A stretch of DNA of 64,000 bases from positions 124,001 through 188,000 of the IMG/VR virus record IMGVR_UViG_3300008110_010000. The stretch is one strand, 5' to 3'. Positions 1,421 through 18,572 of this stretch are shown piece after piece. The notes under the pieces were generated by a model that was not told where the DNA came from, did no database searches, and saw only the letters and a program-made list of their open reading frames with translations. Position 1 is the first letter of the stretch. Each line of letters opens with the position of its first letter. The position numbers were made by a program, and so were the translations under genes.

Positions 1421-1460
1421 ACACCCTAGGATATATACTTTTAAAATATTCCTAGGGTGT
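1421..1460 (+). promoter_or_regulatory. Inverted repeat enclosing a GATATATA motif and covering the GTG start of the nucleotidyltransferase gene
   Basis: ACACCCTAGGA (1421-1431) pairs perfectly with TCCTAGGGTGT (1450-1460). GATATATA at 1430-1437, GTG start at 1457-1459. Confidence 0.6.
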
Positions 1461-4772: not shown

Positions 4773-4780
4773 GATATATA
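4773..4780 (+). promoter_or_regulatory. Putative late promoter motif GATATATA
   Basis: Exact motif in the intergenic gap 20 nt upstream of the prohead protease ATG. Confidence 0.65.
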
Positions 4781-4800: not shown

Positions 4801-6791
4801 ATGAGTCTTAATAACGAATTCGTTTTAGTCCTTGAAAAATCTTCACATAATATGAAGATGGAGAAAAACGGAAGCGATTATTTCCTAGAAGGAATCGCTG
4901 CTGTTTTTGGTAAGGAGAACTCAAATCAAAGAATCTATGAGGAAAGAGAATATCTCCCCCATCTTCAATATTTGAAAGAAAAAATAGACCAAAAAAGATT
5001 AGTAGGTGAATTAGATCACCCTAAGGAATTTGATGTGTCTCTTAAAAACATTTCTCATATCATTGAGGGACTTAACTATAATCAGGACGACAGAACACTT
5101 CGTATTAAGGTTAAACTTTTAGATACTCCAGCCGGTAAAATAGCTAAGTCTTTAGTTGATGCTGGTGTACCGGTTTCCATTTCTTCGAGAGCAGCTGGTA
5201 ACGTTCTAGAAAACAAAAAAGTGCAAATTAAAAAGATCTTTACATATGATTTAGTGGCAGATCCTGGTTTTGAAAATGCACAGCTTGAGAGAGTTTATGA
5301 AAGTCTTGGATATAACGCTGAGCAAAAAAGCATGGCAGAATCTATCATAAAAGGACTCCCTTTAGTTAACGAAAGTCTTGGATTAGAAAATGATTCAAAT
5401 TTTAAGATATATAGAATAAACGATCAGGAAAAAATAAAAAAGCTTCTAGATAAGGAGCCAAATAAGAGTTTAATCATGGAAAATAATTTCGTTACAGCGG
5501 AGGAAATGAACGGATACTCTAAACTAATTAAAAAGGAGATGGATACTATTAAAGGATCTATTGAATCTTTAAGAACTGTTAAGGGAGAGCCTGTTAAGGA
5601 ATCGAATTCCTCTCTTGAAGAAAGAGTAGCAAAATTGGAAAAGTATGCTGATTATTTGGCAGAAAATCTTGAAGCCTCTATTAAATATGGTGAATACCTA
5701 GCTGAGAATCTAGAAGATTCTGTTTCTTATTCCAAATATTTAGCAGAGAATCTTGATAAATCTATTTCTTATGCTAAGTACCTTGCAGAACATTTGGATA
5801 ACAATATTTCTTACTCTGAATACATCGCAGAAAATGTTGACAATAACATGTCAGCAGTTAAATCTATATCTGAGAGATTAGATCAAGGTATTGCTTACAC
5901 AGAATATGTAGCAGAAAGCGTAGATAAGAATATTAAGTACAGCGAGTATCTTGCTGAGAACTTAGATAAAAATATTTCTTATTCGGAATACCTTGCAGAG
6001 AACGTAGATAAGAACATNNNNNNNNNNNNNNNNNNAACCTAGACAAAGGATTAGCCTATGCTGATTATCTAGGAGAAAATCTTGATAAAACAGTTCAGTA
6101 CAGCGATTATTTAGCTGAAAAGCTTTCTAAGAATATTAGCTATGCTGAATATATTGCCGAGACAGTTAATTCTTCAAACGGCACTAAGGAAATGAAAGAA
6201 GCGGTAACTAAAGCAATTTCAGAGAACACAAATACTTCTGGATATGCTGGAGATTACAGCAAAATTTCAAACAAAATCGACAACTTATTAAATACCGTTA
6301 GTAAACAAAAAACGGAACAAATAGCAGAAGCTAAGAATTTTCCTTTCTTGGGTCTTATGAGCCAAGCAAATCAGACACAATTCTTATCCCTGCATGAGGG
6401 CCAAAAACAAAAGGTCGCTAAAGCGTTGAACGAAAGCAACTACTCATCCGAAAAAGAGGTAGTTGAAATCATGGGTAAAGCTCTGGTTGAACAAAATCAA
6501 TCTGGAGAAAAGTTCTTAGACATGATGCCAGAAAAATATAGAGGAGCTTGGGAAAGCATGAACGAGGGTCAAAAAGCCTCTATCATTGCTCAAAGCAAAT
6601 TCTATAGACTGGACACACCTTACCAAATCCAGAACTTCTGGGCTACTAGGGGTATTTCAGTTCCAAAGGCAAATGTGGAAAGAATAGACGAATCCCAAAA
6701 TCAAACAATCTCAGCTTCTCAGCCAAAGGCAGTCTCTAGAGAATATCTACAGAACCTTTCAGAGGCTTTAGAAGCTAGATTTAAAAAATAA
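4801..6791 (+). CDS. gp21: Prohead core protease (T4 gp21-like) fused to scaffolding protein; one gene split in the ORF track by an assembly gap
   Basis: N-terminal GELDHP, SISSRAAG, TYDLVADPGF are gp21-type motifs. The YxxYLAENL repeats continue after the Ns (from 6036: NLDKGLAYADYLGENL...) in frame with the 6192-6791 ORF. Directly upstream of the MCP. Confidence 0.88.
5641..6168 (+). repeat. In-frame 42-bp (14-aa) tandem repeat, at least 12 copies, consensus xYxEYLAENLDKxI
   Basis: KYADYLAENLEASI, KYGEYLAENLEDSV, SYSKYLAENLDKSI, SYAKYLAEHLDNNI, SYSEYIAENVDNNM, (degenerate SAVKSISERLDQGI), AYTEYVAESVDKNI, KYSEYLAENLDKNI, SYSEYLAENVDKN, [gap], AYADYLGENLDKTV, QYSDYLAEKLSKNI, SYAEYIAETV. Confidence 0.92.
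6018..6035. other. Assembly gap (18 N) inside the scaffold repeat
   Basis: Run of N in the sequence; the flanks are out of frame with each other, consistent with a mis-sized gap in a tandem repeat. Confidence 0.97.
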
Positions 6792-6805
6792 CATTTTTTT
6801 CAAAA

Positions 6806-8545
6806 ATGCAACTAATTAATCAACATGAAATCTATGAAACCTGGGCTCCAGTACTTGAGAGCAAAACAGGTATTCAAGAGAAAGGCAAATTAGATTGGTT
6901 AACCAAATATTGCCATTATCACTCTCTAAACGAATCTGCTGGTGCGTACAACACTCTTGGCGTACTTGGCGGTATGGGTCAAATTGCTGCTCCTTCAAAC
7001 GTAGGTCTTTCTGGCGGTCCTGCTGGCTTTTATGCTGGTGGTTCTTATGCTGGTACAGGTCTTGGTTCTGGTGACAAATTCCCTTCACTTCTTCCGCTTG
7101 CTATTCAGGTAGCTGCTAAGACAGTAGGTTTTGACATTGTTCCAGTTATCCCAATGAGCGGTCCTACAGGAGTACTTAGCTATCTTGACTATGTATATGC
7201 TGGTGGTAAGCTTTCTGGTACTGACACAGTATCTCCTTACACAGCTTCTTCCCCTGACCTTATTAAAGTTCCTTCCTCAACAGCTTCTCCAGTATCTGGT
7301 TTAACTGTAGGATCAACTTACCTTCTAGGTGCTGCAGGTCTTTCTTCAACAAAAGATCTTGATAGTGCTGGTGTTGGTGCTCTTGTAGCTGGTAAATATG
7401 TTGGTAACTCTCGTATCGATGGTTTTCCAATTTTCCAAGTAATAGCTCAAACAACTGGTTTCTCAATTGCTCAAGCAATCGATGCAGATGCAGTTATCTA
7501 CTCTGGTTCATTCAATACAGGAACAAACGTTTACACAATCTCTGCAACAGTAGGCTATGCTAACGGTGCTGCAGTATTAGTTAAGACTCTAGAAGATCAC
7601 GTACAAGGTGCTTCTGGTGCTGGTCTTGACAACACAAACGCTTGGCAAGGTCCATACGTAGACGGTACAAAAGCCTACGATCCTATGTCAAGAGGTACAG
7701 CTGAAAGTACTTATTTCAAGTCTCTTGGTTTAACTACTTTCACTAAGTTCGTAGAAGCTGGAACTTTCCAAGTTGCTGCTTCTGTGACAACTGAGCAAAT
7801 CCAAGATCTTAACAAGCAATTCGGTATCGACGTAGTTTCTATGATCGAAAACGCACTTGTTAATGAGGTTTCTCAGGCGATCAACAAGCACATCCTTTCT
7901 AGAGCATTTGCTCTTGGATGGTCTAACCACGCTGAATTCAAGAACACAGAAGGTACTAACCTTAACTTGAACTTGAAATTCACTGGAGGTGGATCTAACT
8001 TAACCTTCATCGGTAAAGATAACGCTCAGCTTGTAATTGCTGGTGGTACTGCTATCGGTACAGGTGGTTATGAGAACCAGTCAACTGTACAAAGAAGACT
8101 ATTCTCAAGAATCCTTGCTGCTGCTAACGTGGTTGCAAACAGAGGAAGAAGAGGCCCTGCTAACTTCATCGTTACTAACTCTCAAGTTGCCTCTGCTTTA
8201 CAGGATATCTCTCAGTTCACTTTCGCTCCTTTCACAAACACTCTTACTCAGAACAACGGTACACTTTACCCAGTTGGTTCTATCGCTGGTATGACAGTTT
8301 ATGTTGACCAGAACATGTCTTTCGGAGACACAAGAGTGCTAGTAGGTAGAAAAGGTGGAGACGACGAACCAGGTCTTAAGTTCATGCCTTACATGATGGC
8401 TGAGTCAATTCAGACTATCTCTGAAGGTACTATGTCACCTAAGATTGCAGTTAAATCTAGATACGCTCTAGTTGAGGCTGGTCACCATCCTCAAACAATG
8501 TACATCTGCTTCCACGTAGAAGTACCTGCAACTGGTATTGCTTAA
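6806..8545 (+). CDS. gp23: Major capsid protein, T4 gp23-like, with a large Ser/Thr/Gly/Ala-rich insertion
   Basis: VVPVIPMSGPTG-type motif (IVPVIPMSGPTGVLSYLDY), EINKHIL-like segment, RGRRGPANFIVT, FMPYM...PKIAVKSRYAL. Strong highly-expressed codon bias. Follows the protease/scaffold. Confidence 0.95.
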   Translation: MQLINQHEIYETWAPVLESKTGIQEKGKLDWLTKYCHYHSLNESAGAYNTLGVLGGMGQIAAPSNVGLSGGPAGFYAGGSYAGTGLGSGDKFPSLLPLAIQVAAKTVGFDIVPVIPMSGPTGVLSYLDYVYAGGKLSGTDTVSPYTASSPDLIKVPSSTASPVSGLTVGSTYLLGAAGLSSTKDLDSAGVGALVAGKYVGNSRIDGFPIFQVIAQTTGFSIAQAIDADAVIYSGSFNTGTNVYTISATVGYANGAAVLVKTLEDHVQGASGAGLDNTNAWQGPYVDGTKAYDPMSRGTAESTYFKSLGLTTFTKFVEAGTFQVAASVTTEQIQDLNKQFGIDVVSMIENALVNEVSQAINKHILSRAFALGWSNHAEFKNTEGTNLNLNLKFTGGGSNLTFIGKDNAQLVIAGGTAIGTGGYENQSTVQRRLFSRILAAANVVANRGRRGPANFIVTNSQVASALQDISQFTFAPFTNTLTQNNGTLYPVGSIAGMTVYVDQNMSFGDTRVLVGRKGGDDEPGLKFMPYMMAESIQTISEGTMSPKIAVKSRYALVEAGHHPQTMYICFHVEVPATGIA

Positions 8546-8567
8546 TCTTAATTAAGTACTCAATTAT

Positions 8568-8597
8568 AAAACCCTCGATGAAAATCGGGGGTTTTTT
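8568..8597 (+). terminator. Rho-independent terminator after the major capsid gene
   Basis: AAAACCCTCGAT-GAAA-ATCGGGGGTTTTTT: stem with one G-U pair, GNRA loop and U tract. Confidence 0.88.
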
Positions 8598-8619
8598 GTT
8601 GCCTTTTAATTTGTTTAGT

Positions 8620-8627
8620 GATATATA
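8620..8627 (+). promoter_or_regulatory. Putative late promoter motif GATATATA
   Basis: Exact motif between the MCP terminator and ATG 8644. Confidence 0.65.
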
Positions 8628-8643
8628 AAGAAAAAGTTGTGCT

Positions 8644-9762
8644 ATGATGATTCTAGAAAATTTCAAAGTGTATTCTGAGTGTAAAGATGCACTAATCGAA
8701 TCCTACGGAGATATAGAGATTGCTAAAAAGAAAATGCTTTCTCGGAACTCTGATCTTGATGAATATATTATTGAGGAAAATTTGATTGCAATCAAAGAAG
8801 GACTCGGTGATAAAATTCTTAATTTCTTTTCTAAGATTGTTGGAGGTGATATTAAAAAACTCAGCACAATTCTAGAAGATATGAAATCAGAAGAGACTAA
8901 GTTCATCAGAGATGAACATGAAGCTGAATCCAAATTTTACAAACTTAGCTCTGCTTTAGCACAACTTAAGAAAGATAGAGCAGACAAGACAGAGCAGGAT
9001 GCTATTTTAGTTAAACTTAACAAAGTACAAAAATTAATTAAGGATCTTGTTTCTTCACATAATTCCATAATGGACGATTTGGAAAAATCAGTAGGAATTA
9101 TAATTAAAGACAATAAAAGAAAAACTGAATATTATAATTTAAAAAGAGCTGAAGATTCTGTAGAGACCAAAAAATTAAGAGTAGATTTTAAGAAAAAATT
9201 AATCACTGACGAAGATAGCTCTGAATATCTTTCTGACATTCAAAAGATCCTAGGAAATCCTAAAGATGCTGAGAAGGATCTAGAAAAAGCTCAGGACAAT
9301 TTATCCAAGGAGAAAGACAAAATTGGTGCTTCAGATGAAGTTACCAAAATGCCTTCTAAGAAAATAGAATCAATCCTTGATACGTACCACAAAGAAATAA
9401 TGAAGTCTATCAAAGATATTAAAAGTCATTCAGATGAAAGTATTAGCGTTTTAAAAGATCTTAGAGATAAAGATTCAGCAGATAACTCAGCATATTCTAG
9501 TATGAAGGATATGTTTAACACTAAAAAGGAAAAAGCAGTGGGATTGGTAGAAGTTGCTATTTCTAAAATTGCTCAGGTTAAAACTGAGGAAAATGATAAC
9601 GTCCAAGACAAAAATAAAGCAATAGACTATCTTATAAATATTAAGAATAAGATGTCTAGAATTAGCTACATAAAATGGCCTTCAACAGATCTTGACAAGG
9701 AAAAGGAAAGGATGGATAAAGTAATTCAAAAAATATCAGAAGAATTCCAAAAAGCAGCTTAA
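8644..9762 (+). CDS. Coiled-coil protein, putative internal head protein
   Basis: K/E-rich helical sequence, N-terminus MMILENFKVYSE, internal LIES/IIEE/IKEG sites; stop overlaps the next start. Confidence 0.45.
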   Translation: MMILENFKVYSECKDALIESYGDIEIAKKKMLSRNSDLDEYIIEENLIAIKEGLGDKILNFFSKIVGGDIKKLSTILEDMKSEETKFIRDEHEAESKFYKLSSALAQLKKDRADKTEQDAILVKLNKVQKLIKDLVSSHNSIMDDLEKSVGIIIKDNKRKTEYYNLKRAEDSVETKKLRVDFKKKLITDEDSSEYLSDIQKILGNPKDAEKDLEKAQDNLSKEKDKIGASDEVTKMPSKKIESILDTYHKEIMKSIKDIKSHSDESISVLKDLRDKDSADNSAYSSMKDMFNTKKEKAVGLVEVAISKIAQVKTEENDNVQDKNKAIDYLINIKNKMSRISYIKWPSTDLDKEKERMDKVIQKISEEFQKAA

Positions 9763-10610
9763 TGAAAAAGTATTCCGAATTTATATCTGAAAGCCACATG
9801 AACGAAGGTTTTTTTAAAAATCTAGTAAACAGAGTGGGATCTTTTCTTTCCGGGAGTAAACCTAAAATTCAGGACAAGATCAATAAGATGGTGCAGATAG
9901 AAAAAGACTTTATTGATAAATCGGACGAGCTTAACTATGATATCTTTTATAGTGAATCTAAAAAGATGCAAGATCCTGTGATGATGAATAATGCCAGACA
10001 AAAGGCATTAATGAGTAAAAGAGCTTTAGATGCTATGAAAATAGCAAAAAATTCCGAAATGAATTTTATAATAAAAGAAATTAAAGAAATATGTGGTGAT
10101 GACACATCTTTAATAAACTTTTATCAGAAAAATAAAATTGCAGCGGATTCTCAAATAGCTCAATATGCATATGAAAAGGCAAGAAGATTCAAAGATTATG
10201 AATACGAGAATCAATTTTATAATCAATGGAAAGGGTTAGAAGCAGAATCTAAAAAGTACAAAACCGAAACCCCATACAGGGAAGAAACTTATCTAAGGGA
10301 TGAAGGAAATTGGGGCATGTATGATTTGCCTCTAAGGGAATTTACTAATCAAATTAGCGGACTCCCTAAAGCAGATATTGCTGAGATGCTAGAAGATATC
10401 GCAGCTTTGAAATATGAGATGGATAGGGATTACAAAAAGAAAACAGAAGAGCTTAAAGAACTAAGAGCTATTTCTTACAGATCCGGAGATATTCAAACTT
10501 TTCAAATGGCAAAAAGCAGAAATGAAGATCTGAAAGACGAATACCGCAGAAATAGTAATTCCATAAATCAAAAAATTACCATCTTAAGGAATAGGCTAAA
10601 GAATATATAG
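9762..10610 (+). CDS. Putative internal head protein with T4-type capsid-targeting sequence
   Basis: N-terminus MKKYSEFISE matches the T4 internal-protein signal MKTYQEFIAE at 7 of 10 positions. Shares the EGxxxxIxNxxxxxxxGxxxK segment with the 8644 protein. Confidence 0.55.
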   Translation: MKKYSEFISESHMNEGFFKNLVNRVGSFLSGSKPKIQDKINKMVQIEKDFIDKSDELNYDIFYSESKKMQDPVMMNNARQKALMSKRALDAMKIAKNSEMNFIIKEIKEICGDDTSLINFYQKNKIAADSQIAQYAYEKARRFKDYEYENQFYNQWKGLEAESKKYKTETPYREETYLRDEGNWGMYDLPLREFTNQISGLPKADIAEMLEDIAALKYEMDRDYKKKTEELKELRAISYRSGDIQTFQMAKSRNEDLKDEYRRNSNSINQKITILRNRLKNI

Positions 10611-10627
10611 ATAAAATAAATAAAATC

Positions 10628-12898
10628 ATGAGAAATCCTCTTTTTGAAAGCTTAGTTAATAGGGCTAATTCATATAAAAACCCGTTTCTTAACGAACAGG
10701 ACAAACCTCAACCCGGAACGGTTTTTTCTGATTATGTTAAATCCCTTGCAAAATTAGGTAACGATCTAGCTGCAAACTTTATTATTGCTGTTAATAGCTA
10801 TCCAGAGCCATCTAAGTTTAAAGATGAGTATATTGCAAATTTACCAGCAAAAATTCAAGCAGCAGTTGATGCTATTGATACTAAAAAAACAATAGGACCA
10901 CAATTAGAAGATTTTTATAATGCTTTAAGACAAGAGGTAAACAATTTTTTAAGTGCATCTAAGGGTGACACAGAATATGTTAATCTACTAGATGAATGGA
11001 GAAAAAATCTTTCCTCCGGTTTTAAAAATTACAAAGTAGCAATTGATAAAGCTATGGTTTATGTTAAACAACAGGACGAATCAGGACAAGCCAGAATGGA
11101 AGATTCTGACTGGGAGTTGTTAAAAAAACTTGTTTCTGGAGGCTTAGCAAAGCTTAAAGACGAAATGCAAACAAAGGCAACATTAGCAGGGGAAAGTAAG
11201 TCCTTTATTCCGGAAGAATTTTCAACTAGAGGCCAAGTTATGGAACAACTCATCCATAATAAAATAGCTATCGATTTTAATTCTTTTAATAGGATAGTAA
11301 ACGAGGCTAAAGAAGATAGGGTTGCTAGAAGAAATGCCAGGGCAGAATCTGCTAGAGTTGAAACCTTAGAAGGATCTGTTAAGGGGGTTCTTGAACTTAT
11401 AGCAATGAGATCTGGTGATCCCTCCAAGAAGAATTTTAAATCCCTAGCAATGAACGGAGAATTTGTCTCCCTTATAAAGAGCGTTGCCGAGGTTAGAGCA
11501 GAATTATCAGTTGATGACGAGCAGAAGAAAGATATAGATTTTAAACAGGTCGGTAAAACAATTTCGAATTTAGAATCTCTATTCAAATCTAAAAAAGATG
11601 CTTTTGATAAAGCATACGATGAGGAATCAAAGACTCTTAGAAGTTTTAAAACACTATCAATTGCAACCCCTGAAGTCGAAAAATACAAACAAGATGGTGA
11701 TAACGCTTTTAGCACACTTCCTATGCTTTCTCAAAATGCTGCCAATCAAGCTGCAATAGAAAGAAAGAAACCTAAACCAACAGGAGATTCAGGTACTGCA
11801 GGAACAGCAGGAACAGCAGGTAGCGCTGGAGCTTCAGCACCTTTTAAATTAGAAAATACTGTTAAATATGATGCTAAAAAGAGGGGGAGTGTAAATGATG
11901 ACGTTAAAAAAGTTCAACAATTAATTATCGATAAAATCGGAAAGTCAAGCAAGGGAAAAGACAGTGAACTTTATAAGAAATTTTCCAAGTATGGGGCAGA
12001 CGGAAAATTTGGACAAAACACAGGAAATCTTATATCCTCTATTAAGGCAGGATTGGGATTAAAGGATACTTCTTCTGATATTACCCAAGAATTAGTGGAT
12101 AAACTTTCCTCCGAGGTATTTGAATCACTTTACTCTGTTAGAGAGAACTTCGATTGGGATGCATATACCGCAAAATCAAATTCTTTCTCTTCGTCGGGTT
12201 CTAAATCGGGATCATCGGGATCTGGATCAGGAGGAGAAAAAAAATCCAGCACTTTTAATTGCATTAGGTCTGCAGACAACACAACAAAAATCTCGGGAGG
12301 TAAGGCAACCATAGAAAGAGAAAATAAAAACAAGCACACTTTTAATGCAGATGGGACTTATTCTTTTTTCTATGCATCAAAAAACGAAACACTTAAAGGA
12401 ACATGGAAATGCACCCCAGAGGGATTTGAAGCTTATACAGATTCCGATAAGGACACGTTCTACGGAACACCAGGAGTAATGGACTGGAAAAGTAACATGG
12501 ACCAAGCTGAGAAAGCAAAAGCAGACGCAGTGGCAAAAGCAGCTGCAGATCTTCAAGTTAAGGCGGGTGAGATATGTAAAAAGATTTTAGTTAAGATGTC
12601 CGGAGCAAACGAGAGAGAAGAAGAGGCTGCTGCAGTATTTAGAGACGAGGTCACAACTCCAGAAATGTTTAAAGCGGTCGAGACCTTTTGGAATAATAAA
12701 TGGTGGCCTTCACAAAGACAAATGATGAATGCTCCTTCTTATTATAATAAAATGTCAGTGGACGAAATAACGAAATTTATGGAATATAAAAAGGATAAAA
12801 GTGGATTCGGATTAAGAAACCTAGTTCAATTTTATTTTGACAACTCTCAAAAAGCCTTACTGAATGGATACCTTCCATCAGGGGTAAAGAAGTTCTAG
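10628..12898 (+). CDS. Large putative virion/internal protein with peptidoglycan-binding-like domain
   Basis: DDVKKVQQLI...GADGKFGQNT...IKAGLGL (PG_binding_1-like), GTAGTAGTAG and SGSSGSGSGG linkers, N-terminus MRNPLFES. AATATATA variant at 10602-10609. Confidence 0.5.
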   Translation: MRNPLFESLVNRANSYKNPFLNEQDKPQPGTVFSDYVKSLAKLGNDLAANFIIAVNSYPEPSKFKDEYIANLPAKIQAAVDAIDTKKTIGPQLEDFYNALRQEVNNFLSASKGDTEYVNLLDEWRKNLSSGFKNYKVAIDKAMVYVKQQDESGQARMEDSDWELLKKLVSGGLAKLKDEMQTKATLAGESKSFIPEEFSTRGQVMEQLIHNKIAIDFNSFNRIVNEAKEDRVARRNARAESARVETLEGSVKGVLELIAMRSGDPSKKNFKSLAMNGEFVSLIKSVAEVRAELSVDDEQKKDIDFKQVGKTISNLESLFKSKKDAFDKAYDEESKTLRSFKTLSIATPEVEKYKQDGDNAFSTLPMLSQNAANQAAIERKKPKPTGDSGTAGTAGTAGSAGASAPFKLENTVKYDAKKRGSVNDDVKKVQQLIIDKIGKSSKGKDSELYKKFSKYGADGKFGQNTGNLISSIKAGLGLKDTSSDITQELVDKLSSEVFESLYSVRENFDWDAYTAKSNSFSSSGSKSGSSGSGSGGEKKSSTFNCIRSADNTTKISGGKATIERENKNKHTFNADGTYSFFYASKNETLKGTWKCTPEGFEAYTDSDKDTFYGTPGVMDWKSNMDQAEKAKADAVAKAAADLQVKAGEICKKILVKMSGANEREEEAAAVFRDEVTTPEMFKAVETFWNNKWWPSQRQMMNAPSYYNKMSVDEITKFMEYKKDKSGFGLRNLVQFYFDNSQKALLNGYLPSGVKKF

Positions 12899-12961
12899 CT
12901 GTAATGACATTTTAATAAATACGGAATTTTTAGTACTTTTAGGGATATAAATTTAAAATTT

Positions 12962-13501
12962 ATGTCCCTTTTTGTTGTAGAGGGAGCCAGAAAGTCAGGT
13001 AAAACTTTTTTTGTCAGCTCCCAAAATACCTTTCCAGTTTTTAAGTTCGATTTTAACGGAGCTTATACAAATTTAGAACTCCCAGAGGGTGGAGAGATAA
13101 CTCATGGTATCGGATTAGGCAAGGAATTAATGGTTCATCAATTGAATAGAGATTCTTTTTTACCCGATTTAATCATGGATCGGGGGGTAATTACCAATTC
13201 CGTCTGGGGAATACTTAACAACCGGGTATCCCGCGATACAGTTTATCAGGAATTGGCTTACATGGTAAAAAATAATCTTTTTAAAGATGTCTTTTTCTTT
13301 TATGTTTATGGAACATACCAAGGAGAAAGAAAAAAAGACGTTTGGGACCACATGGATAAAATGATCCCGAAGGAAATAGAAATCTTTGATGAGATCATAG
13401 CTTATCTTTCGTTAGCCGGTGTTAAGATTCACAAGGTTGAAAACAAGTTTGATCTTGAATCGCTATCCGGATTTCAGACTATAATTAAGAACTTAAAATA
13501 A
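12962..13501 (+). CDS. P-loop nucleoside-monophosphate kinase-like protein (dNMP/thymidylate kinase fold)
   Basis: N-terminal Walker A VVEGARKSGKT and a DRG motif (IMDRGVITNSVWG) as in dTMP kinases. Confidence 0.65.
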   Translation: MSLFVVEGARKSGKTFFVSSQNTFPVFKFDFNGAYTNLELPEGGEITHGIGLGKELMVHQLNRDSFLPDLIMDRGVITNSVWGILNNRVSRDTVYQELAYMVKNNLFKDVFFFYVYGTYQGERKKDVWDHMDKMIPKEIEIFDEIIAYLSLAGVKIHKVENKFDLESLSGFQTIIKNLK

Positions 13502-14919
13502 TGTGCGGAATACTAATTGCTCATAATCCCTCAGAGGAAAGGATAAAATCCATTTCTCATAGAGGTATTGAATATTACACTCATTCAGATGCTTCTGGAC
13601 TGACTCTATGCCACCATAGATTGCCTATTCAGACTGCAGTTGGTGACGGCTGGATTCAGCCAGTAGAGTTATCTAATAACCGTTATCTCCTATTTAACGG
13701 GGAAATTTTTAATTACCCCTTACATTATGGATCAGATACAGAATACCTCAAAGATCTTTTTAGTACCTTTGAATTTTCCTCCTTGGAGATGTTTATCTCT
13801 CTATATGAACCACATATTAAAAGCTGGGATGGGTTTTGGGCTATTTGCTTGGTTGATATGTCCAAGAAAGATGTGATTTGCTTTACAGATCCTCTAGGTA
13901 AGAAGTGCCTTTATACCAACGAATTAGGTGAGATCTGTTCAGAGATGAAAGGTTTACTGAATGAAAATTCTATAATTAGCTCAGGATTTATGGGCGGTGT
14001 GAGGAAATGGGGGTATGTTGCTAACGAATCTACCCCCTTCGAAAACGTCCAAAAATTAAAACCTAATTTCATCTACAAATGGAATTTTAATGCTCCGGAC
14101 TTTAAGCAAGAATATGGTCCTTATTTCGCATTTAAACCCCCCAAATTTCAATTTGATTCTGAAGACATGTTACTAGATTGGGTTTGGAATAAACTCGAGC
14201 TGGCAACAAAAAACAGGCTATTAAGCTTGGATTATCCTATCTCCATCTTACTATCCGGTGGATTGGACTCTTCTATCATAGGAGGGTTACTTCTTAAACT
14301 TGGGGCAGATGTTAGCTGGTACACTATCAATAATGGTCCAGATGACGAATATGTTAGAGAATGCGAGGATTACTGGGGAATAAAAGTAAATCGCCTAGAA
14401 TACAACATGAATGAGGTAGATTTAGATCTAAACGAGATTTATTTTAGGTGGAACGAATCCCCCGTTGATATGGGAAGTGTGGTACCCCAATATCATCTCT
14501 TTGATGCTATTAAAAAAGGAACAAATACCAGAATAGTTTTATCCGGTGATGGGGCGGATGAAATGTTTGGGGGGTATCGGAGAATAAACGAATATGATTC
14601 CCAGCAATCCGATATTTTCCATGAACTCACATATTATCACCTTCCTAGATTAGATAAAATGAGTATGGCACATACTTTGGAGTTAAGAAACCCGTTTTTA
14701 AATTTAGAACTAATTCAGCTTGCAATGTGGCTTCCATTTGAATACCGGAAGAATAAGACAATTTTGAAAAAAACTTTCAAAGGGCTAGTTCCAGATTCTG
14801 TTATAGAAAGAAAGAAACATCCTTTAAAGAACGACAAAATAGTAAAAGATCCCAATGATTATAGGGTTGAAGCTATTAATTACTTTGTAAAGGGATACGA
14901 AAACTATCTTTTAAAATAG
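13501..14919 (+). CDS. asnB: Asparagine synthetase B-like glutamine amidotransferase
   Basis: Ntn Cys at MCGI, HRG, HHRL, FNGEIFNY; synthetase SGGLDSS, SGDGADEMFGGY, RLDKMSMAHTLELRNPFL. Confidence 0.92.
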   Translation: MCGILIAHNPSEERIKSISHRGIEYYTHSDASGLTLCHHRLPIQTAVGDGWIQPVELSNNRYLLFNGEIFNYPLHYGSDTEYLKDLFSTFEFSSLEMFISLYEPHIKSWDGFWAICLVDMSKKDVICFTDPLGKKCLYTNELGEICSEMKGLLNENSIISSGFMGGVRKWGYVANESTPFENVQKLKPNFIYKWNFNAPDFKQEYGPYFAFKPPKFQFDSEDMLLDWVWNKLELATKNRLLSLDYPISILLSGGLDSSIIGGLLLKLGADVSWYTINNGPDDEYVRECEDYWGIKVNRLEYNMNEVDLDLNEIYFRWNESPVDMGSVVPQYHLFDAIKKGTNTRIVLSGDGADEMFGGYRRINEYDSQQSDIFHELTYYHLPRLDKMSMAHTLELRNPFLNLELIQLAMWLPFEYRKNKTILKKTFKGLVPDSVIERKKHPLKNDKIVKDPNDYRVEAINYFVKGYENYLLK

Positions 14920-16377
14920 ATCTATACCTGCTGTAGAATCTCCCTTAGCTTTAAGAGGAGAATATTTCATAGGTTCTTGTGTCAGCAAGAAAGTTTTACT
15001 TGAATCTACTATTAGGCCAGCTTCCTCCATAAATGTTCTGTTAATTAACATCGGGGTGCTTTTATAGGTTCTATCCACTAGAGAAAATTTTATCTTCTTA
15101 TAGACCATTCCATTGAATTCTACATCCATGAGAATTACTGGTCTCTTCTCTGTTTGATCACCAACCTCAGCATGAGAGTAATCTACTATTCTGTTACTAA
15201 AGGATTTACCCCCAATTGTCCAATTTATAAATTCATCCTCTTGGATTGAATAGTCTGCATGTAAAGAACATGCCATTGCTCCGTTCCCGGTGTCAAGTTT
15301 ACCTATAAATTTACCAACACCTTTTACATCAAAGATCTCTCTAAATCCTGCTACTTTTCTTGGATAGTTCCAGTTCTTTTTATTTAAGATGAAATCTAAA
15401 ACTATTGATGTGACATCTAAACCTGTTGCTTTTTCTATGCCATCAGTTCCGGGAGATGCATTTACCTCTAGAACATAAGGTAAACCTGTATCCTTTTCTA
15501 TGATAATATCAACTCCACACCAGGAACATCCAGTAGCTTTTGCTGCTTCTATAGCAAGATGTTCTATTTCTGGAGATATTTCGATAGCTTCTGCTCTGCC
15601 GCCTAATGAGACATTGGTTCTAAAATCTTTTTCAATCTTGATCCTTTTCATTGCAGCTATAACCGTATAATCAGTTCCCGTTCTCTCGTTCTTGGTCCCA
15701 AGTACATGGATTCTCAGGTCGTGGTCCGCTTCAATTTTTTCTTGTACAATAAGCTCAGTATCCGGTGATAATTTCCAAATTGTTTGTAATGTAGAAAGTA
15801 AAGATTCCTGTGAATCTGCCTGAAATACACCTATTCCCTTTGTTCCGCTGAGGAGCTTTACAATTACCGGATATTTTCCTCCTATTCTAGAAACGGAGCT
15901 TTCGATATCTTCCTCCGATGATATAAGAGAAGTTTTTGGCGTTGATATTTTTTTCTCTTGAAGTTTTTGAACTGTATCTAATTTATCTTCACAAAGAAGC
16001 ACAGATTTTAATGAGTTTACTGAAACAAAGCCCAGAGATTCTAATTTCTCAAAGAATTTAACAGCAGCGGTGGAGTTTATGCTAGATCTTCTAGCAAGAA
16101 TGATGGAGCTTTTAGGTTCTATTTCATACTTGTTTTTACTTCCTTTATTTCTTATATAAAAGCTTCCAGATTCTGTTTTTTCTATTTCCCCTTGTGATGT
16201 ATCAACAACAACACATTTAAAGTTCATAGCAGAGGATTTAGCCATCATTTTTTTAACAGTTGGGGCATATGAGTTTTCTTTGGACTCTAGCTTGGTTGTT
16301 AAAATTATTAAAGATATTGGTTTCCCTTGATTTGGTTTACCCCCCTGAAATACGAATTCTTCTTGTTCTGTAATCAC
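14911..16377 (-). CDS. RimK-family ATP-grasp ligase fused to C-terminal RimK-associated aspartic-protease-like domain
   Basis: EDKLDT, YPVIVKLLSGTKGIGV, IVQEKI, DLRIHV, DFRTNVSLGG, GVDII, VLEVNASPG; C-terminal GKLDTGNG and LINRTFM. Confidence 0.88.
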   Translation of the reverse strand: MITEQEEFVFQGGKPNQGKPISLIILTTKLESKENSYAPTVKKMMAKSSAMNFKCVVVDTSQGEIEKTESGSFYIRNKGSKNKYEIEPKSSIILARRSSINSTAAVKFFEKLESLGFVSVNSLKSVLLCEDKLDTVQKLQEKKISTPKTSLISSEEDIESSVSRIGGKYPVIVKLLSGTKGIGVFQADSQESLLSTLQTIWKLSPDTELIVQEKIEADHDLRIHVLGTKNERTGTDYTVIAAMKRIKIEKDFRTNVSLGGRAEAIEISPEIEHLAIEAAKATGCSWCGVDIIIEKDTGLPYVLEVNASPGTDGIEKATGLDVTSIVLDFILNKKNWNYPRKVAGFREIFDVKGVGKFIGKLDTGNGAMACSLHADYSIQEDEFINWTIGGKSFSNRIVDYSHAEVGDQTEKRPVILMDVEFNGMVYKKIKFSLVDRTYKSTPMLINRTFMEEAGLIVDSSKTFLLTQEPMKYSPLKAKGDSTAGIDLF

Positions 16378-16394
16378 TACCTTATTTGTTTATC

Positions 16395-16431
16395 TATATA
16401 TCAACGTTTCCCCTGCAAGAAGAGATATATA
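16395..16431. promoter_or_regulatory. Back-to-back divergent GATATATA motifs
   Basis: TATATATC at 16395-16402 (minus-strand motif facing RimK) and GATATATA(AATA) at 16424-16431 facing ATG 16447. Confidence 0.7.
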
Positions 16432-16446
16432 AATAAAAAAGTAAAG

Positions 16447-17100
16447 ATGAAGGTACTAAGGTATTCGGAATTTAGTTTAAACGAATCTCATGAGGAGTAC
16501 TTTAAGCTCTTAGAAGGACTAGATGCTCATTATCAAAACATGGTTGAAAATGGATATAGTCAGAATCAGATCGATGAGGGTATATGGGATTTAGTAGGAT
16601 CACTAGGTGCAGGATTTACTGACCGAATGAAAAACTATGCTGCTGGATGGCTTTTGAAGCAATTGGGTCTTCCCTCAGATAACAACTTTTTAAGTGAATT
16701 TGCAAAGAACATTATCGAACAAGTAAGTTTTAGAAATATAGGAAGATATTTCGGAGAAGGATCCTGTAAATATTGGATAGATGCCATCGGAAAAGGACTA
16801 TTGGAGACACTAGAAGAAAAAGCGCTTGCCGTTATCTTATCCAGAGGAATTGGAATAGACATTAACATGAGCGGAGGTTTTATGGGAACACTTGCCGGAT
16901 CAATGAGAGAGGCTTTAACTAATTATATAAACTCAACACAATTTGTGGAATCTTTGAGTGATAAACTTGAGGGTGTAGTTTGTGGTCAGGGAACTTCTTT
17001 TACCAACATATTCGGAGGTAAATTCTCAGAAAAAGATATAGAAAATGCTGCTATGGGAAAAGAGAAAAGCGGCGGTATTCTGGATATATTAGGTATATAA
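16447..17100 (+). CDS. Putative internal head protein (start revised to ATG 16447)
   Basis: MKVLRYSEFSLNES N-terminus directly after the promoter motif. The longer 16327 start would overlap the divergent RimK gene. Gly-rich amphipathic segments. Confidence 0.55.
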   Translation: MKVLRYSEFSLNESHEEYFKLLEGLDAHYQNMVENGYSQNQIDEGIWDLVGSLGAGFTDRMKNYAAGWLLKQLGLPSDNNFLSEFAKNIIEQVSFRNIGRYFGEGSCKYWIDAIGKGLLETLEEKALAVILSRGIGIDINMSGGFMGTLAGSMREALTNYINSTQFVESLSDKLEGVVCGQGTSFTNIFGGKFSEKDIENAAMGKEKSGGILDILGI

Positions 17101-17110
17101 TACTTTAAAA

Positions 17111-17371
17111 ATGCATACAAAAGACATAAAAAAGAGAGAAGTATTAGACTTTAAGCAATTTCTTAAAGTTGTAAACGATCCATGGAATTCCAAAAATTTT
17201 AACAAAGAAGTTAAAAACAGGTCTCCATTTCATAAAATAAAGCCAGAACAGCCTTATGATTATGTGGGATATAAGGATGGTGTTTTTAATCAAACTTCTA
17301 AAATAGACTATCCAGGAAAAGGATCTCAGGAGTCTGGAATGGCATCCAATATGGGTGATGCAACTGAATAA
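17111..17371 (+). CDS. Small hypothetical protein (VLDFKQFL motif)
   Basis: ORF with A-rich leader between virion-type genes. Confidence 0.5.
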   Translation: MHTKDIKKREVLDFKQFLKVVNDPWNSKNFNKEVKNRSPFHKIKPEQPYDYVGYKDGVFNQTSKIDYPGKGSQESGMASNMGDATE

Positions 17372-17385
17372 TTTCCAGAAAAAAA

Positions 17386-17393
17386 GATATATA
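17386..17393 (+). promoter_or_regulatory. Putative late promoter motif GATATATA(AATA)
   Basis: Exact motif 17 nt upstream of ATG 17411; includes the T4 late consensus TATAAATA. Confidence 0.7.
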
Positions 17394-17410
17394 AATAAAA
17401 TACGAATACA

Positions 17411-17944
17411 ATGGAAAAAAAGATATTAAGTTTTGAAGAGTTTTCTAAGCGATATGCAGAAGGAACTCTCGACCAAGATCTTCCACAAGAAGAATCACCA
17501 GAAGATGATTCAATGGATTTTGACGGTGGATCTGATGATGTAATGGGAGATGAGGAAACTGAAGAAGAAAACGAAGAAACTGAAGGTGGATCCGAAGATG
17601 ATTTTGAAATAGGCGGGGAAGATACCGAATCTGAAGAAGATACCGAATCTGACGAAGACGAGGAAGATATGGGAATGGATGATGAAGAAGAGGAGCAAGA
17701 GGAAATGGAAGAGTCTGAAGAAGATGCATTCGAGAGAGAGGTTCAAGAATACAATGAAGAATACGACTTCGAAGAAGACGAGAATTTAGAAGAGGAAATG
17801 GACGAAGAAGAAATGGAAGGTGGAGATCAAGAGGATATGGATTGGGATCATGAAATGGGCATGGAGGAATCCGATGAAATGGAAGAGGAAGAAGAAGAAT
17901 CAGAGGAAATTTCAAATCCAGCTTTCAATAAATTTTTTAACTAA
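17411..17944 (+). CDS. Extremely acidic low-complexity protein, putative prohead core/internal protein
   Basis: Roughly half D/E. N-terminus MEKKILSFEEF, C-terminus NPAFNKFFN. Own promoter motif and terminator. Confidence 0.6.
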   Translation: MEKKILSFEEFSKRYAEGTLDQDLPQEESPEDDSMDFDGGSDDVMGDEETEEENEETEGGSEDDFEIGGEDTESEEDTESDEDEEDMGMDDEEEEQEEMEESEEDAFEREVQEYNEEYDFEEDENLEEEMDEEEMEGGDQEDMDWDHEMGMEESDEMEEEEEESEEISNPAFNKFFN

Positions 17945-17965
17945 TAAGCATTAATAATACAAGCG

Positions 17966-17998
17966 AAGGGATCAATTATTTGATCCCTTTTTCTTTTT
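17966..17998 (+). terminator. Rho-independent terminator
   Basis: AAGGGATCAA-TTAT-TTGATCCCTT followed by TTTCTTTTT. Confidence 0.88.
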
Positions 17999-18003
17999 AT
18001 AGT

Positions 18004-18011
18004 GATATATA
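18004..18011 (+). promoter_or_regulatory. Putative late promoter motif GATATATA
   Basis: Exact motif between the terminator and ATG 18018. Confidence 0.65.
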
Positions 18012-18017
18012 AAACAA

Positions 18018-18572
18018 ATGAGTTTAAGGCATATAAAATCTTTCAGTTCTCTTTTCGAAAGCACTTCGGCGGGATCCCACGACCGAGGATATTCTGATGT
18101 TCCCCCTTTTAAATACGCCATAAATTTTGATCACAGGATCGGTTATTCTAAAGATGATTTTGCAAAGGATCTGAATGAGATCTACCTTAGATCTTCCTCT
18201 AAGGAAAAATCCGAAATGATGGATTTTATATTTAAGAATTCAGGGATATTAAAGATCTCACAAATACCAGAGCTTTCTCAGGAAAAAATAGATACTTTAA
18301 TAAAAGACCTGGAGGGGTTTTTAGATTCTAGAGCAGAGCATAATCCTAAAATGCTTCCAGACGGTTATTTGTTATGCTACGAGAATTTGAGGAAAAAGGG
18401 AAGAAGATGCGACGTGTATTATTCCCCTTCTTTGAAATCTGTGAAGATCTGCTTTACTGACTCATATCCAGAGAAAGACGACGAAGTTATTTCCCTAGAA
18501 GATTTTATCCCAGATTCAGTGGGAATTAATCAGAAAGAATTTTCCAATTTATTGAGTAGAATGGAAGGTTAA
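18018..18572 (+). CDS. Hypothetical protein with capsid-targeting-like N-terminus
   Basis: MSLRHIKSFSSLFES; no other recognisable motif. Confidence 0.5.
   Translation: MSLRHIKSFSSLFESTSAGSHDRGYSDVPPFKYAINFDHRIGYSKDDFAKDLNEIYLRSSSKEKSEMMDFIFKNSGILKISQIPELSQEKIDTLIKDLEGFLDSRAEHNPKMLPDGYLLCYENLRKKGRRCDVYYSPSLKSVKICFTDSYPEKDDEVISLEDFIPDSVGINQKEFSNLLSRMEG

What the first reader, a model, noticed from the sequence alone, without database searches (positions are those of the whole stretch)
5641..18572. Scaffold repeat equals the capsid-targeting signal: cargo proteins may mimic the scaffold to be packaged
Seen: the scaffold repeats xYSEY(L/I)AE at least 12 times. Nearby genes begin with the same aromatic-x-x-aromatic-...E pattern: MKKYSEFISE (9762), MKVLRYSEFSLNE (16447), KILSFEEF (17411), HIKSFSSLFE (18018), ILENFKVYSE (8644), IQNFKDWSLNE (1457), VLDFKQFL (17111). 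Scaffold KYSEYLAE versus cargo KYSEFISE is near-identical. Known: the T4 internal-protein signal is MKTYQEFIAE and gp21 cleaves after (I/L)xE. Inference: each scaffold repeat is both a self-assembly unit and a protease site, and about 8-10 cargo proteins carry one copy to co-assemble into the core. This gives a testable mechanism for capsid targeting and a large uncharacterised injected proteome.
Basis: partly seen in the sequence, partly recalled or inferred. Interest (0 to 1): 0.78.

Follow-up and report, generated by a model that had tools for sequence, protein, structure and literature searches.

The report
Phage capsid-targeting tags and repeat scaffold
A 219-kb freshwater jumbo phage builds its head much as phage T4 does: a protease is fused to a scaffold of fifteen 14-residue repeats, and about twenty late proteins begin with a T4-type capsid-targeting tag whose key residues also occur in every repeat, a testable clue to how such tags find the capsid core.

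Summary
The assembly gap hides 109 nt, not 18. Two independent contigs read through it in frame, giving one 693-aa protein: a T4 gp21-type (S77) protease fused to a scaffold of 15 in-register 14-aa units. Fourteen units carry Y-x-x-Y-[LIV]-[AG]-E. An internal late-type promoter and a conserved Met226 point to a nested scaffold-only gene.

The N-terminal signal is genome-wide: 8 strict and about 12 looser cases in 230 genes. It is conserved in orthologues and sits on unrelated mature proteins, including CHAP, MoxR, metallopeptidase-like and nucleotidyltransferase-like enzymes. Nearly all these genes lie behind the promoter motif used by head and tail genes. A model built only from other clade members ranks the proven T4 IPII and IPIII targeting sequences first and second in T4.

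"Repeat equals signal" is only partly supported. The units share the four residues that T4 mutagenesis ties to targeting (two aromatics) and processing (aliphatic, Glu). Their upstream half is more tag-like than 99.8% of internal [ILVM]xE sites. But profile models do not cross-recognise the two, they do not co-vary (Y/Y/A against F/F/N), and T4's own scaffold lacks the motif. Mimicry is plausible, not shown.

The parts
1430..1437 (+). late-type promoter-like motif (GATATATA) upstream of 1457
1457..2200 (+). nucleotidyltransferase-like protein (GTG start) with a tag-like N-terminus, FRIQNFKDWSLNE|D
   Evidence: Pfam NTP_transf_2 is marginal at 21.1 bits (cut-off 21); phrog_36119. The N-terminal F-x-x-W-[ILV]-x-(N)E is conserved in orthologues.
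2212..4767 (+). 851-aa protein of unknown function with a second N-terminal motif, NP[IV][YF]ES[LM]; probable head-internal or ejection protein
   Evidence: No Pfam or PHROG hit. The motif is conserved in orthologues and shared with 10628.
4773..4780 (+). late-type promoter-like motif upstream of the protease-scaffold gene
4801..6791 (+). single protease-scaffold ORF, 693 aa once the gap is filled
   Evidence: L001 and L002 read through the gap in frame.
4801..5430 (+). prohead protease domain, Peptidase S77 (T4 gp21-like)
   Evidence: Pfam PF03420 2.2e-8; phrog_207 2.9e-37; PDB 5JBL E=0.0017. H73, S128/S129 and D150 are invariant in 28 orthologues. AF2 pLDDT is 75-83.
5406..5413 (+). internal copy of the late-type promoter-like motif, inside the gene
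   Evidence: It lies 69 nt upstream of Met226. Motif plus Met are conserved in 25 of 27 orthologues, including those where the spacing differs.
5476..6791 (+). putative nested scaffold-only gene, starting at the conserved in-frame ATG of codon 226 (468 aa with the gap filled)
   Evidence: M226 is nearly invariant and an internal promoter motif precedes it. Expression is not shown.
5638..6176 (+). array of 14-aa units. 15 units with the gap filled: 14 carry Y-x-x-Y-[LIV]-[AG]-E and unit 6 is degenerate
   Evidence: AF2 predicts two long helices broken at unit 6, at low confidence.
6018..6035 (.). assembly gap; the true content is 109 nt (the rest of unit 10, unit 11, and most of unit 12)
   Evidence: contigs break here
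6177..6791 (+). C-terminal helical domain of the scaffold (conserved QSKFY.L.TPYQI.NFW.TRG)
   Evidence: Invariant columns; AF2 pLDDT 74-79 for residues 530-650.
6806..8545 (+). major capsid protein, T4 gp23 family
   Evidence: Pfam Gp23 2.2e-40; relatives listed.
6806..6934 (+). predicted 43-aa capsid-protein propeptide ending KYCHYHSLNE|S
   Evidence: The site is essentially invariant ([CA]H[YF]H[SN]LNE) across all aligned orthologues. Cleavage is inferred by analogy with T4 gp23 FGSFLTE|A.
8644..9762 (+). late protein with a looser tag (MMILENFKVYSECKDALIE|S) and its own promoter motif at 8620
9762..10610 (+). late protein with a strict tag, MKKYSEFISE|S
   Evidence: The tag is kept in orthologues of 27-55% identity.
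10628..12898 (+). 756-aa late protein with N-terminal NPLFESL...FLNE|Q
16447..17100 (+). late protein with the tag MKVLRYSEFSLNE|S; promoter motif at 16424
17111..17371 (+). weak candidate (VLDFKQFL at residues 11-18, no [ILV]xE after it)
   Evidence: 1.1 bits
17411..17944 (+). very acidic late protein with the tag-like start MEKKILSFEEF; promoter motif at 17386
   Evidence: 7.3 bits
18018..18572 (+). late protein with a looser tag, MSLRHIKSFSSLFE|S; promoter motif at 18004

Best explanation
This is the head-core module of a T4-superfamily jumbo phage from freshwater.

One gene (4801-6791, gap included) encodes a gp21-type serine protease fused to a scaffolding protein. An internal late promoter and the conserved Met226 most likely also yield the scaffold alone, so the protease enters the core through a shared scaffold body.

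The scaffold's middle is 15 helical 14-residue units. Each ends in Y-x-x-Y-[LIV]-A-E, a gp21-type cleavage site, so after shell assembly the protease should mince it into peptides of about 14 residues that leave the head.

The capsid protein loses a 43-residue propeptide at LNE|S. About twenty late proteins of unrelated sequence, enzymes included, start with a T4-type capsid-targeting propeptide: [KR]-x-[IL]-x-x-[FY]-x-x-[FYW]-(0-3 residues)-[ILV]-x-E. This takes them into the core and is then cut off, leaving them as internal, probably injected, proteins.

The scaffold unit and the tag share the aromatic-x-x-aromatic-aliphatic-x-Glu skeleton. Most likely both use one docking-and-cutting determinant of the core. 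Cargo would be held by the kind of contact that holds scaffold units, whether unit to unit or unit to protease domain.

- Shown: anatomy, family membership, enrichment, conservation, late-promoter association.
- Inferred: cleavage, packaging, injection, the nested product, and the binding partner.
For: - **Gap and ORF:**
- **S77 protease:**; catalytic-type residues invariant.
- **Units:** conserved down to 42% protease identity and in huge phage LR756502. P7 Y, P4 Y, P3 L and P1 E are among the most informative positions. Predicted helical.
- **Nested gene:**
- **Tag enrichment:**
- **Out-of-sample model:** 11 of the top 12 hits in this genome are N-termini. In 138 T4 ORFs, IPII and IPIII rank 1 and 2, the gp23 cleavage site 5, and IPI 6.
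- **T4 mutagenesis:** residues 4 and 7 for targeting, 8 and 10 for processing (PMC9026906).
- **Orthologue conservation of the tags:**
- **Unrelated mature parts:** only one paralogous pair among 25.
- **Late-promoter motif:** 9 of 17 tagged genes against 32 of 213 others, p=6.5e-4; 15 of 17 counting operon position.
- **Tag as add-on:** MoxR homologues in 568 other phage records align only from residue 87-144 onward, so the tagged N-terminus is a clade-specific addition.
- **Unit-tag similarity:** the unit's targeting half is more tag-like than 99.8% of internal [ILVM]xE sites.
Against: - No experimental data exist for any member of this clade: no virion proteome, no N-terminomics, no cultured host.
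- Profile models of tag and unit do not recognise each other.
- Tag and unit keep different residues (F/F/N against Y/Y/A) and do not co-vary.
- T4 has the tag but no such scaffold motif.
- Some tagged proteins (MoxR ATPases, metallopeptidase-like) are not classes known as virion proteins.
- The AF2 model of the repeats has low confidence (pLDDT about 40).
- The number of units in this very assembly is taken from sister contigs.
Confidence: 0.7

Rival explanations
1. One reading: the tag IS one scaffold unit. Cargo proteins co-polymerise into the scaffold lattice by mimicking a repeat, and unit-to-unit contacts are the receptor for the targeting sequence.
For: - Shared four-residue skeleton, identical to the T4 targeting and processing positions.
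- Targeting half in the top 0.2% of sites.
- The first unit even carries the tag's upstream aliphatic residue (L-x-x-Y-x-x-Y-L-A-E).
- Both motifs are present in this clade and in LR756502, and both absent from the held 85 kb of PTm1, whose scaffold has a different repeat.
Against: - No covariation: H at P4 in about 20% of units in the 48-51% identity group is not mirrored in the tags.
- Systematic Y/Y/A against F/F/N difference.
- The unit's conserved ENLD tail has no counterpart in the tags.
- T4 packs tagged proteins without such a scaffold.
- Models do not cross-detect.
Confidence: 0.3
2. The shared skeleton only reflects an extended substrate preference (P7-P1) of the S77 protease. Tag, scaffold unit and capsid-protein propeptide look alike because all are cut by one enzyme. 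Targeting uses other contacts, or docking on the zymogen itself.
For: - In T4 the same skeleton sits at the gp23 maturation site FGSFLTE|A and in the internal-protein tags, but not in gp22.
- Here the capsid protein has an aromatic pair before LNE.
- The protease is physically fused to the scaffold, so docking on the protease would also place cargo in the core.
Against: - In T4, residues 4 and 7 affect targeting rather than processing, and an uncleavable residue-10 Asp variant is still targeted (PMC9026906).
- Many T4 gp21 sites lack aromatics.
- The spacer between the aromatic pair and [ILV]xE varies from 0 to 3 residues or more among tags, which a rigid protease subsite model does not predict.
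Confidence: 0.3
3. The resemblance between unit and tag is coincidence. The scaffold needs amphipathic helices with cleavage sites, and the aromatics are there for coiled-coil packing only.
For: - One evolutionary event (one repeat family), so the effective n is 1.
- The chance of the skeleton in some register of a 14-mer is about 0.3% from the internal rate of 2.3e-4.
- It is about 1% given an [ILVM]xE site (15 of 1393).
- Profile models see nothing.
Against: p of about 0.002 for the targeting half, with the very positions matching the functional T4 residues.
Confidence: 0.12
4. The N-terminal motif is not a capsid-targeting signal at all. It could be, for example, a regulatory pro-sequence or an amphipathic start helix common in this AT-rich clade.
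For: - It occurs on enzyme classes not known as virion proteins (MoxR, DUF2201).
- It is very frequent in LR756502, at least 13 of about 60 neighbouring genes by eye.
Against: - Cross-recognition of the experimentally proven T4 targeting sequences.
- Co-occurrence with an S77 protease.
- Late-promoter association.
- An [ILV]xE site follows the aromatic pair.
Confidence: 0.08

Closest known systems
Phage T4 capsid targeting sequence of internal proteins IPII/IPIII (MKTYQEFIAE) and IPI (Mullaney and Black 1996, as reviewed in PMC9026906 and PMC9958956)
   Same: - A 10-20 residue N-terminal propeptide.
- Aromatics three residues apart, followed by aliphatic-x-Glu.
- Attached to unrelated mature proteins.
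- A gp21-family protease encoded next to the capsid gene.
- The clade model ranks IPII and IPIII first in T4.
   Different: - About 20 tagged proteins per genome instead of 3-4, including enzymes (CHAP, MoxR, metallopeptidase-like, nucleotidyltransferase-like).
- A variable 0-3 residue spacer before the cleavage site.
- The host and phage lineage are remote: capsid protein about 30-45% identical to its nearest database phages, and the protease matches T4 only at profile level.
- Nothing has been tested experimentally.
T4 gp21 protease and gp22 scaffolding core protein
   Same: S77 protease. The scaffold is rich in [IL]xE sites and expected to be degraded to small peptides. Gene order is protease, scaffold, capsid protein.
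   Different: - Protease and scaffold are one ORF here.
- The scaffold centre is a regular 15 x 14-residue array, each unit carrying the tag-like skeleton.
- gp22 has 16 irregular sites, none tag-like.
- No detectable homology to gp22 (hhalign probability 1.4%).
Lambda C/Nu3-type nested scaffold gene (scaffold translated from an internal in-frame start of the protease gene; own knowledge)
   Same: An in-frame conserved internal Met after the protease domain, preceded by a promoter-like motif. The shared C-terminal body would co-assemble protease and scaffold.
   Different: The protease family differs (S77, not lambda C). An internal promoter is present, rather than only an internal ribosome start. 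Expression is not shown.
Tenacibaculum phage PTm1 'prohead core scaffolding protein and protease' (BBI90692.1)
   Same: A fused protease-scaffold gene directly upstream of a gp23-family capsid gene. Its scaffold also has repeats ending in L-S-E.
   Different: The unit is different (W-[IL]-x3-[FY]-T-x-x-L-[SC]-E, no aromatic at P4). No T4-type tags are found in the 85 kb examined.
phiKZ / SPN3US giant-phage propeptides (PMC5694885)
   Same: Many head-internal or ejection proteins are processed by a prohead protease, and the propeptides are thought to target them to the prohead.
   Different: Those propeptides are mostly over 100 residues long. The cleavage motif is of the A-x-E type (for example ALE). 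The protease family is S80, and no scaffold counterpart is known.
Phage P1 DarB N-terminal capsid-targeting signal (PMC9024508)
   Same: An N-terminal signal sufficient to load a protein into the capsid.
   Different: The sequence is unrelated, no separate scaffold is present, and the system is different.

Membership tests
Peptidase S77 (T4 gp21 prohead core protease) | Sequence match to the family model above the curated threshold | tested here: met
   PF03420 34.2 bits against a cut-off of 27; phrog_207 2.9e-37.
Peptidase S77 (T4 gp21 prohead core protease) | Similarity to the solved gp21 structure and conserved catalytic-type His and Ser | tested here: met
   The profile hits 5JBL at E=0.0017 across the GELDHP region. 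H73, S128/S129 and D150 are invariant in 28 orthologues. The assignment of these residues as catalytic is by analogy.
Peptidase S77 (T4 gp21 prohead core protease) | Cleaves after [IL]-x-E | not testable with these tools
   Only candidate sites can be listed.
T4-type capsid targeting sequence | N-terminal location, 10-20 residues, on otherwise unrelated proteins | tested here: met
   Predicted propeptides are 10-23 residues long.
T4-type capsid targeting sequence | Aromatic residues at the positions of T4 residues 4 and 7; aliphatic and Glu at positions 8 and 10 | tested here: met
   Eight strict cases. The clade model ranks T4 IPII and IPIII 1 and 2. Functional positions are from PMC9026906.
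T4-type capsid targeting sequence | Co-expression with head assembly (late genes) | tested here: inconclusive
   A promoter-like motif is shared with head and tail genes (p=6.5e-4). Timing itself was not measured.
T4-type capsid targeting sequence | Sufficient to package a foreign protein; removed by the prohead protease | not testable with these tools
   This needs a cultured phage or a reconstituted procapsid.
T4 gp22 scaffolding protein family | Sequence homology to gp22 | tested here: not met
   hhalign probability 1.4%. The protein works like gp22 but is not filed as a member.
Nested protease/scaffold gene (lambda C/Nu3 type) | Conserved in-frame internal start downstream of the protease domain | tested here: met
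   M226 is nearly invariant. A promoter-like motif precedes it in 25 of 27 orthologues.
Nested protease/scaffold gene (lambda C/Nu3 type) | A separate scaffold-only polypeptide is made | not testable with these tools
Scaffold unit as a member of the tag motif class | Recognised by a tag profile, or the tag recognised by a unit profile | tested here: not met
   Best -1.8 bits, rank 102 of 274. The unit model gives N-termini at most 2.3 bits, within noise.
Scaffold unit as a member of the tag motif class | Shares the four functional skeleton positions and a tag-like targeting half | tested here: met
   (0.18% of 1094 control sites score as high).
Scaffold unit as a member of the tag motif class | Co-variation of unit and tag across clades | tested here: not met
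   Units are Y/Y/L/A, with H at P4 in distant groups. Tags stay F/F(W)/[IL]/N.

The most novel reading that the evidence does not exclude
The scaffold of this clade is literally a polymer of capsid-targeting units. The aromatic-x-x-aromatic face is the self-association surface of the prohead core, and a cargo protein needs only one such unit, followed by a protease site, to be co-polymerised and later released. That would identify the long-unknown receptor of T4-type capsid targeting sequences. It would also explain how a single short tag lets these phages load about twenty different enzymes for injection.
Probability: 0.3. Interest if true: 0.8.

Novelty: new variant of a known kind. Interest (0 to 1): 0.6.

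Why it matters
A 2023 review of the T4 head states that how proteins are localised to the scaffolding core 'remains mysterious' and that the core structure is unresolved (PMC9958956).

This clade offers a simpler, more regular system. The scaffold's conserved residues coincide with the residues that target cargo in T4. The protease is tethered to the scaffold. About twenty tagged late proteins, several of them enzymes (cell-wall hydrolase, MoxR ATPases, metallopeptidase-like, nucleotidyltransferase-like), would form an unusually large packaged and probably injected proteome.

It also shows that the T4 targeting tag is far older and more widespread than the T-even phages. That is useful both for annotating huge-phage 'hypothetical' proteins and for protein-delivery engineering.

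Tried and rejected
- **Model of the 11 visible repeats against the proteome.** Only the scaffold itself scores. N-termini reach at most 2.3 bits, mixed with internal noise.
- **Model of the 7 strict tags from this genome.** Scaffold units score 0.2-0.7 bits. With the larger model built only from other clade members they score -1.8 bits or less.
- **Covariation of unit and tag residues across six identity groups.** None found.
- **Homology of the scaffold part to T4 gp22.** None.
- **Tandem Repeats Finder on the DNA.** It sees only 2.3 copies of a 42-nt period, because the units are synonymously diverged. The protein register is the better evidence.
- **Contigs from public runs laid across the gap.** Every run's contigs break inside the repeats, so no independent copy-number count was obtained.
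- **AF2 of the whole protein.** The repeats are helical but pLDDT is about 40, so no packing model can be trusted. It was rerun without them.
- **Comparisons with other phages.** PTm1 and 121Q were compared for co-occurrence of tag and unit, and T4 for its tag and scaffold (T4 has the tag but no such scaffold motif). The results are suggestive but rest on too few lineages.
- **Signal peptide or lipoprotein reading of the N-termini.** Rejected: they are charged and amphipathic, not hydrophobic.
- **Literature searches.** No description was found of T4-type tags outside T4-like phages, or of a repeat scaffold of this kind. The library is incomplete, so this is weak negative evidence.

Full report
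**Source and context.**
The window is bases 124001-188000 of a single-contig, 219,355-bp, 35% GC genome whose only gap is the one in this finding. The capsid protein (6806-8545) belongs to the T4 gp23 family (Pfam 2.2e-40). Its nearest database relatives are uncultured huge phages (45%), Lak phages (39%), and Tenacibaculum, Flavobacterium, Chryseobacterium and Sphingomonas jumbo phages (about 30%). Near-identical DNA occurs in freshwater and lake metagenomes. This is an uncultured freshwater jumbo phage of the wider T4 superfamily.

**The gap, tested first.**
- As written (18 N), the two sides are not in frame. The left ORF runs in the phase of 4801 and stops reading at 6017 after '...NVDKN' plus two bases of an Ile codon. 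The right side reads 'NLDKG LAYADY...' from 6036 in another phase, down to the stop at 6791.
- The repeat register predicts 25+42k missing bases.
- Two IMG/VR contigs from different metagenomes (L001, L002) are 100% identical in the protease part and match both 100-nt flanks exactly. They carry 109 nt there (k=2), differing from each other only at synonymous sites, with no N.
- The result is one 693-aa ORF. Relatives at 82-97% protease identity encode proteins of 690-696 aa (most 693).
- Logan contigs of four runs tile the region but all break within the repeats, as expected of short-read graphs. The copy number in this very assembly is therefore inferred, not read.

**Anatomy of the protein.**
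- Residues 1 to about 210 are a Peptidase S77 (T4 gp21) domain: PF03420 34.2 bits against 27, phrog_207 2.9e-37, and the profile hits PDB 5JBL. H73 in GELDHP, S128/S129 and D150 are invariant in 28 orthologues.
- From residue 280 there are 15 units of exactly 14 residues (ISYSEYLAENLDKN). Fourteen carry Y-x-x-Y-[LIV]-[AG]-E. Unit 6 is degenerate but keeps I-S-E.
- One unit upstream there is a further in-register L-E-E.
- Over 549 units from 42 orthologues, the most informative positions are P4 Tyr (3.09 bits), P7 Tyr (3.07), P2 Ala (2.58), P3 Leu/Ile/Val (2.45) and P9 Ile (2.22). P1 Glu is fixed by the anchoring used.
- The array is kept down to 42% protease identity and in the 642-kb phage LR756502.
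- AF2 (28-sequence alignment) gives a confident protease domain, two long helices (267-359 and 367-487) broken at the degenerate unit but with pLDDT about 40, and a confident helical C-terminal domain.
- There is no detectable homology to T4 gp22.

**A nested scaffold gene.**
- A motif [AGT]ATATATA lies 8-70 nt upstream of start codons of 41 of 230 genes. These include the protease-scaffold gene, the sheath-like gene and tail/baseplate-like genes.
- In the first 23 kb of the window it occurs 12 times. Ten copies lie 8-70 nt upstream of an ORF's start codon, one lies about 125 nt upstream of the next start, and the twelfth (5406-5413) lies inside the protease-scaffold gene.
- That internal copy is 69 nt before an in-frame ATG (codon 226, nt 5476) that is nearly invariant.
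- Motif plus Met are present in 25 of 27 orthologues, also where the spacing is 33-36 nt and the motif variant is ATAAATA.
- The likely meaning is a scaffold-only product sharing its body with the protease fusion, as in lambda C/Nu3 (own knowledge). Expression is not shown.

**The N-terminal signal.**
- A crude gene call (232 ORFs; 230 genes after curation) shows many proteins starting M-[KR]-x-[IL]-x-x-[FY]-x-x-[FYW]-...-[ILV]-x-E.
- The strict skeleton in the first 16 residues occurs 7 times against 0.84 expected (p=3e-5). With a 0-3 residue spacer it occurs 16 times against 4.0. One more strict case appears after correcting a start codon (MIKGFSEYINE).
- In the window these are 1457 (GTG start), 8644, 9762, 16447, 17411 and 18018, with 17111 and 22155 as weak cases.
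- Elsewhere in the genome (window coordinates): -123095, -122825, -73663, -65893, -62745, -61508, -60678, -55355, -54382, -52799, 80685, 85888, 87603 and 88162.
- Mature parts are unrelated apart from one pair of MoxR paralogues.
- Several are enzymes: a CHAP hydrolase, a DUF2201 metallopeptidase-like protein, two AAA_5/MoxR ATPases and a nucleotidyltransferase-like protein.
- Homologues of the MoxR protein in 568 other phage records align only from residue 87-144 onward, so the tagged N-terminus is an add-on of this clade.
- Orthologues of 9762, 8644 and 1457 keep the tag at 27-75% overall identity. Across the clade the consensus is M-K-H-I-x-x-F-[ED]-x-F-[IL]-N-E.

**Is it a T4-type capsid targeting sequence?**
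- A model built from 23 tags of other clade members (none from this genome or T4) places N-termini at 11 of the top 12 hits in this genome.
- In 138 ORFs from 90 kb of T4 it ranks IPII and IPIII first and second (9.6 and 8.9 bits), the gp23 maturation site FGSFLTE fifth and IPI sixth. The third hit is a spurious ORF over tRNA genes.
- The T4 sequences were read from NC_000866.
- According to PMC9026906, targeting of IPIII depends mainly on residues 4 and 7 (Tyr, Phe) and processing on residues 8 and 10 (Ile, Glu). Those are exactly the four skeleton positions.
- Tagged genes are preferentially behind the late-type motif: 9 of 17 against 32 of 213, p=6.5e-4. It is 15 of 17 when genes immediately downstream in the same operon are counted. 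The two exceptions are a spurious ORF in a tRNA region and the weak 22155.

**Does the scaffold repeat equal the signal?**

For:
- The unit carries the same four-position skeleton, and these are among its most constrained positions.
- Conditional on an [ILVM]xE site, only 0.18% of 1094 internal sites have a P8-P4 half as similar (BLOSUM62) to clade tags as the mean unit. The figure is 0.09% for the consensus unit. Unit mean score is 8.85, against 10.6 for true tags and -4.45 for background.
- The first unit even has the tag's upstream aliphatic residue.

Against:
- Neither profile recognises the other class.
- Units are Y/Y/L/A followed by a conserved N-L-D. Tags are F/F(W)/[IL]/N followed by anything.
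- Where units drift (His at P4 in about 20% of units in the 48-51% identity group), tags do not follow.
- T4 packs tagged proteins although gp22, gp67 and gp68 have no tag-like site. The only tag-like site there is in the capsid protein propeptide.
- PTm1 has a fused protease-scaffold with a different repeat and no tags in the 85 kb examined. 121Q has separate genes and no skeleton. This fits co-occurrence, but the number of lineages is tiny.

**Conclusion on mechanism.**
The module is a T4-type prohead core system with three unusual features: protease and scaffold in one gene with a nested scaffold start, a strictly periodic scaffold in which every unit ends in a protease site, and an expanded set of tagged late proteins.

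The shared skeleton most likely marks a common docking-and-cutting determinant. Whether cargo docks on scaffold units (mimicry), on the tethered protease, or on a third surface cannot be decided here.

My estimates are:
- about 0.7 for the overall model;
- about 0.3 for strict mimicry;
- about 0.3 for 'protease specificity only';
- about 0.1 for coincidence.

**Novelty.**
The components are known kinds (S77 protease, capsid targeting sequence, nested scaffold). The periodic tag-like scaffold, the breadth of the tagged proteome and its presence in a remote jumbo-phage clade appear undescribed in the searchable literature. Reviews state that core localisation is still unexplained.

Noticed in passing
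window 1430, 2139, 4773, 5406, 8620, 10602, 16424, 17386, 18004, 19311, 20019 (+ strand); 16402-16395 (- strand); genome-wide, 41 of 230 genes: A promoter-like motif [AGT]ATATATA(A) lies 8-70 nt upstream of start codons of head, tail and tagged genes. It resembles the T4 late promoter TATAAATA (own knowledge). An ORF that looks gp55-like by eye lies at window -14780..-14424; this was not checked with a tool.
   Followed up: partly
window 5406-5413 and 5476: An internal copy of that motif plus the conserved in-frame Met226 inside the protease-scaffold gene, kept in 25 of 27 orthologues. This is probably a nested scaffold-only gene.
   Followed up: yes
window 2212-4767 and 10628-12898: Two large late proteins share a different conserved N-terminal motif, N-P-[LIV]-[FY]-E-S-[LM], followed 10-15 residues later by [ILF]-x-E. 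This may be a second class of propeptide. Neither protein has a Pfam or PHROG hit.
   Followed up: partly
window 17411-17944: A 177-aa extremely acidic (Asp/Glu-rich) protein with a tag-like start. It recalls the acidic tail of the T4 prohead core protein gp67.
   Followed up: no
L057:7492-8286 (+), L057:13645-14616 (-), L057:14618-16186 (-), L058:9888-11516 (+); window 1457-2200: Tagged proteins include a CHAP peptidoglycan hydrolase, a DUF2201 metallopeptidase-like protein, two MoxR-type AAA ATPases and a nucleotidyltransferase-like protein. The ATPase plus metallopeptidase pair also occurs, untagged, in N4-like and other phages.
   Followed up: partly
window 13501-14919 (+) and 14911-16377 (-): An asparagine-synthase-like gene and a RimK-type ATP-grasp gene with a Zn_protease-like tail sit in the middle of the head and cargo gene cluster. 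The ATP-grasp gene has the promoter motif on its own strand.
   Followed up: no
L059 (LR756502.1 205281-247257): In a 642-kb huge phage with the same scaffold repeats, at least 13 of about 60 neighbouring genes start M-K-x-[IL]-[KR]-x-[FYW]-x-x-[FY]. Many lack an obvious [ILV]xE directly after. The tag family may be much larger in huge phages.
   Followed up: no
L061:27854-29548 (Tenacibaculum phage PTm1): The fused protease-scaffold of PTm1 has its own repeat (W-[IL]-x3-[FY]-T-x-x-L-[SC]-E, four copies). Periodic scaffolds with one cleavage site per unit may therefore be a wider habit of this phage group.
   Followed up: partly
window -66440..-65942 (genome about 57.5-58.1 kb): ORFs called there look like translations of structured RNA genes (a tRNA cluster, by eye). 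They were not scanned with ARAGORN.
   Followed up: no
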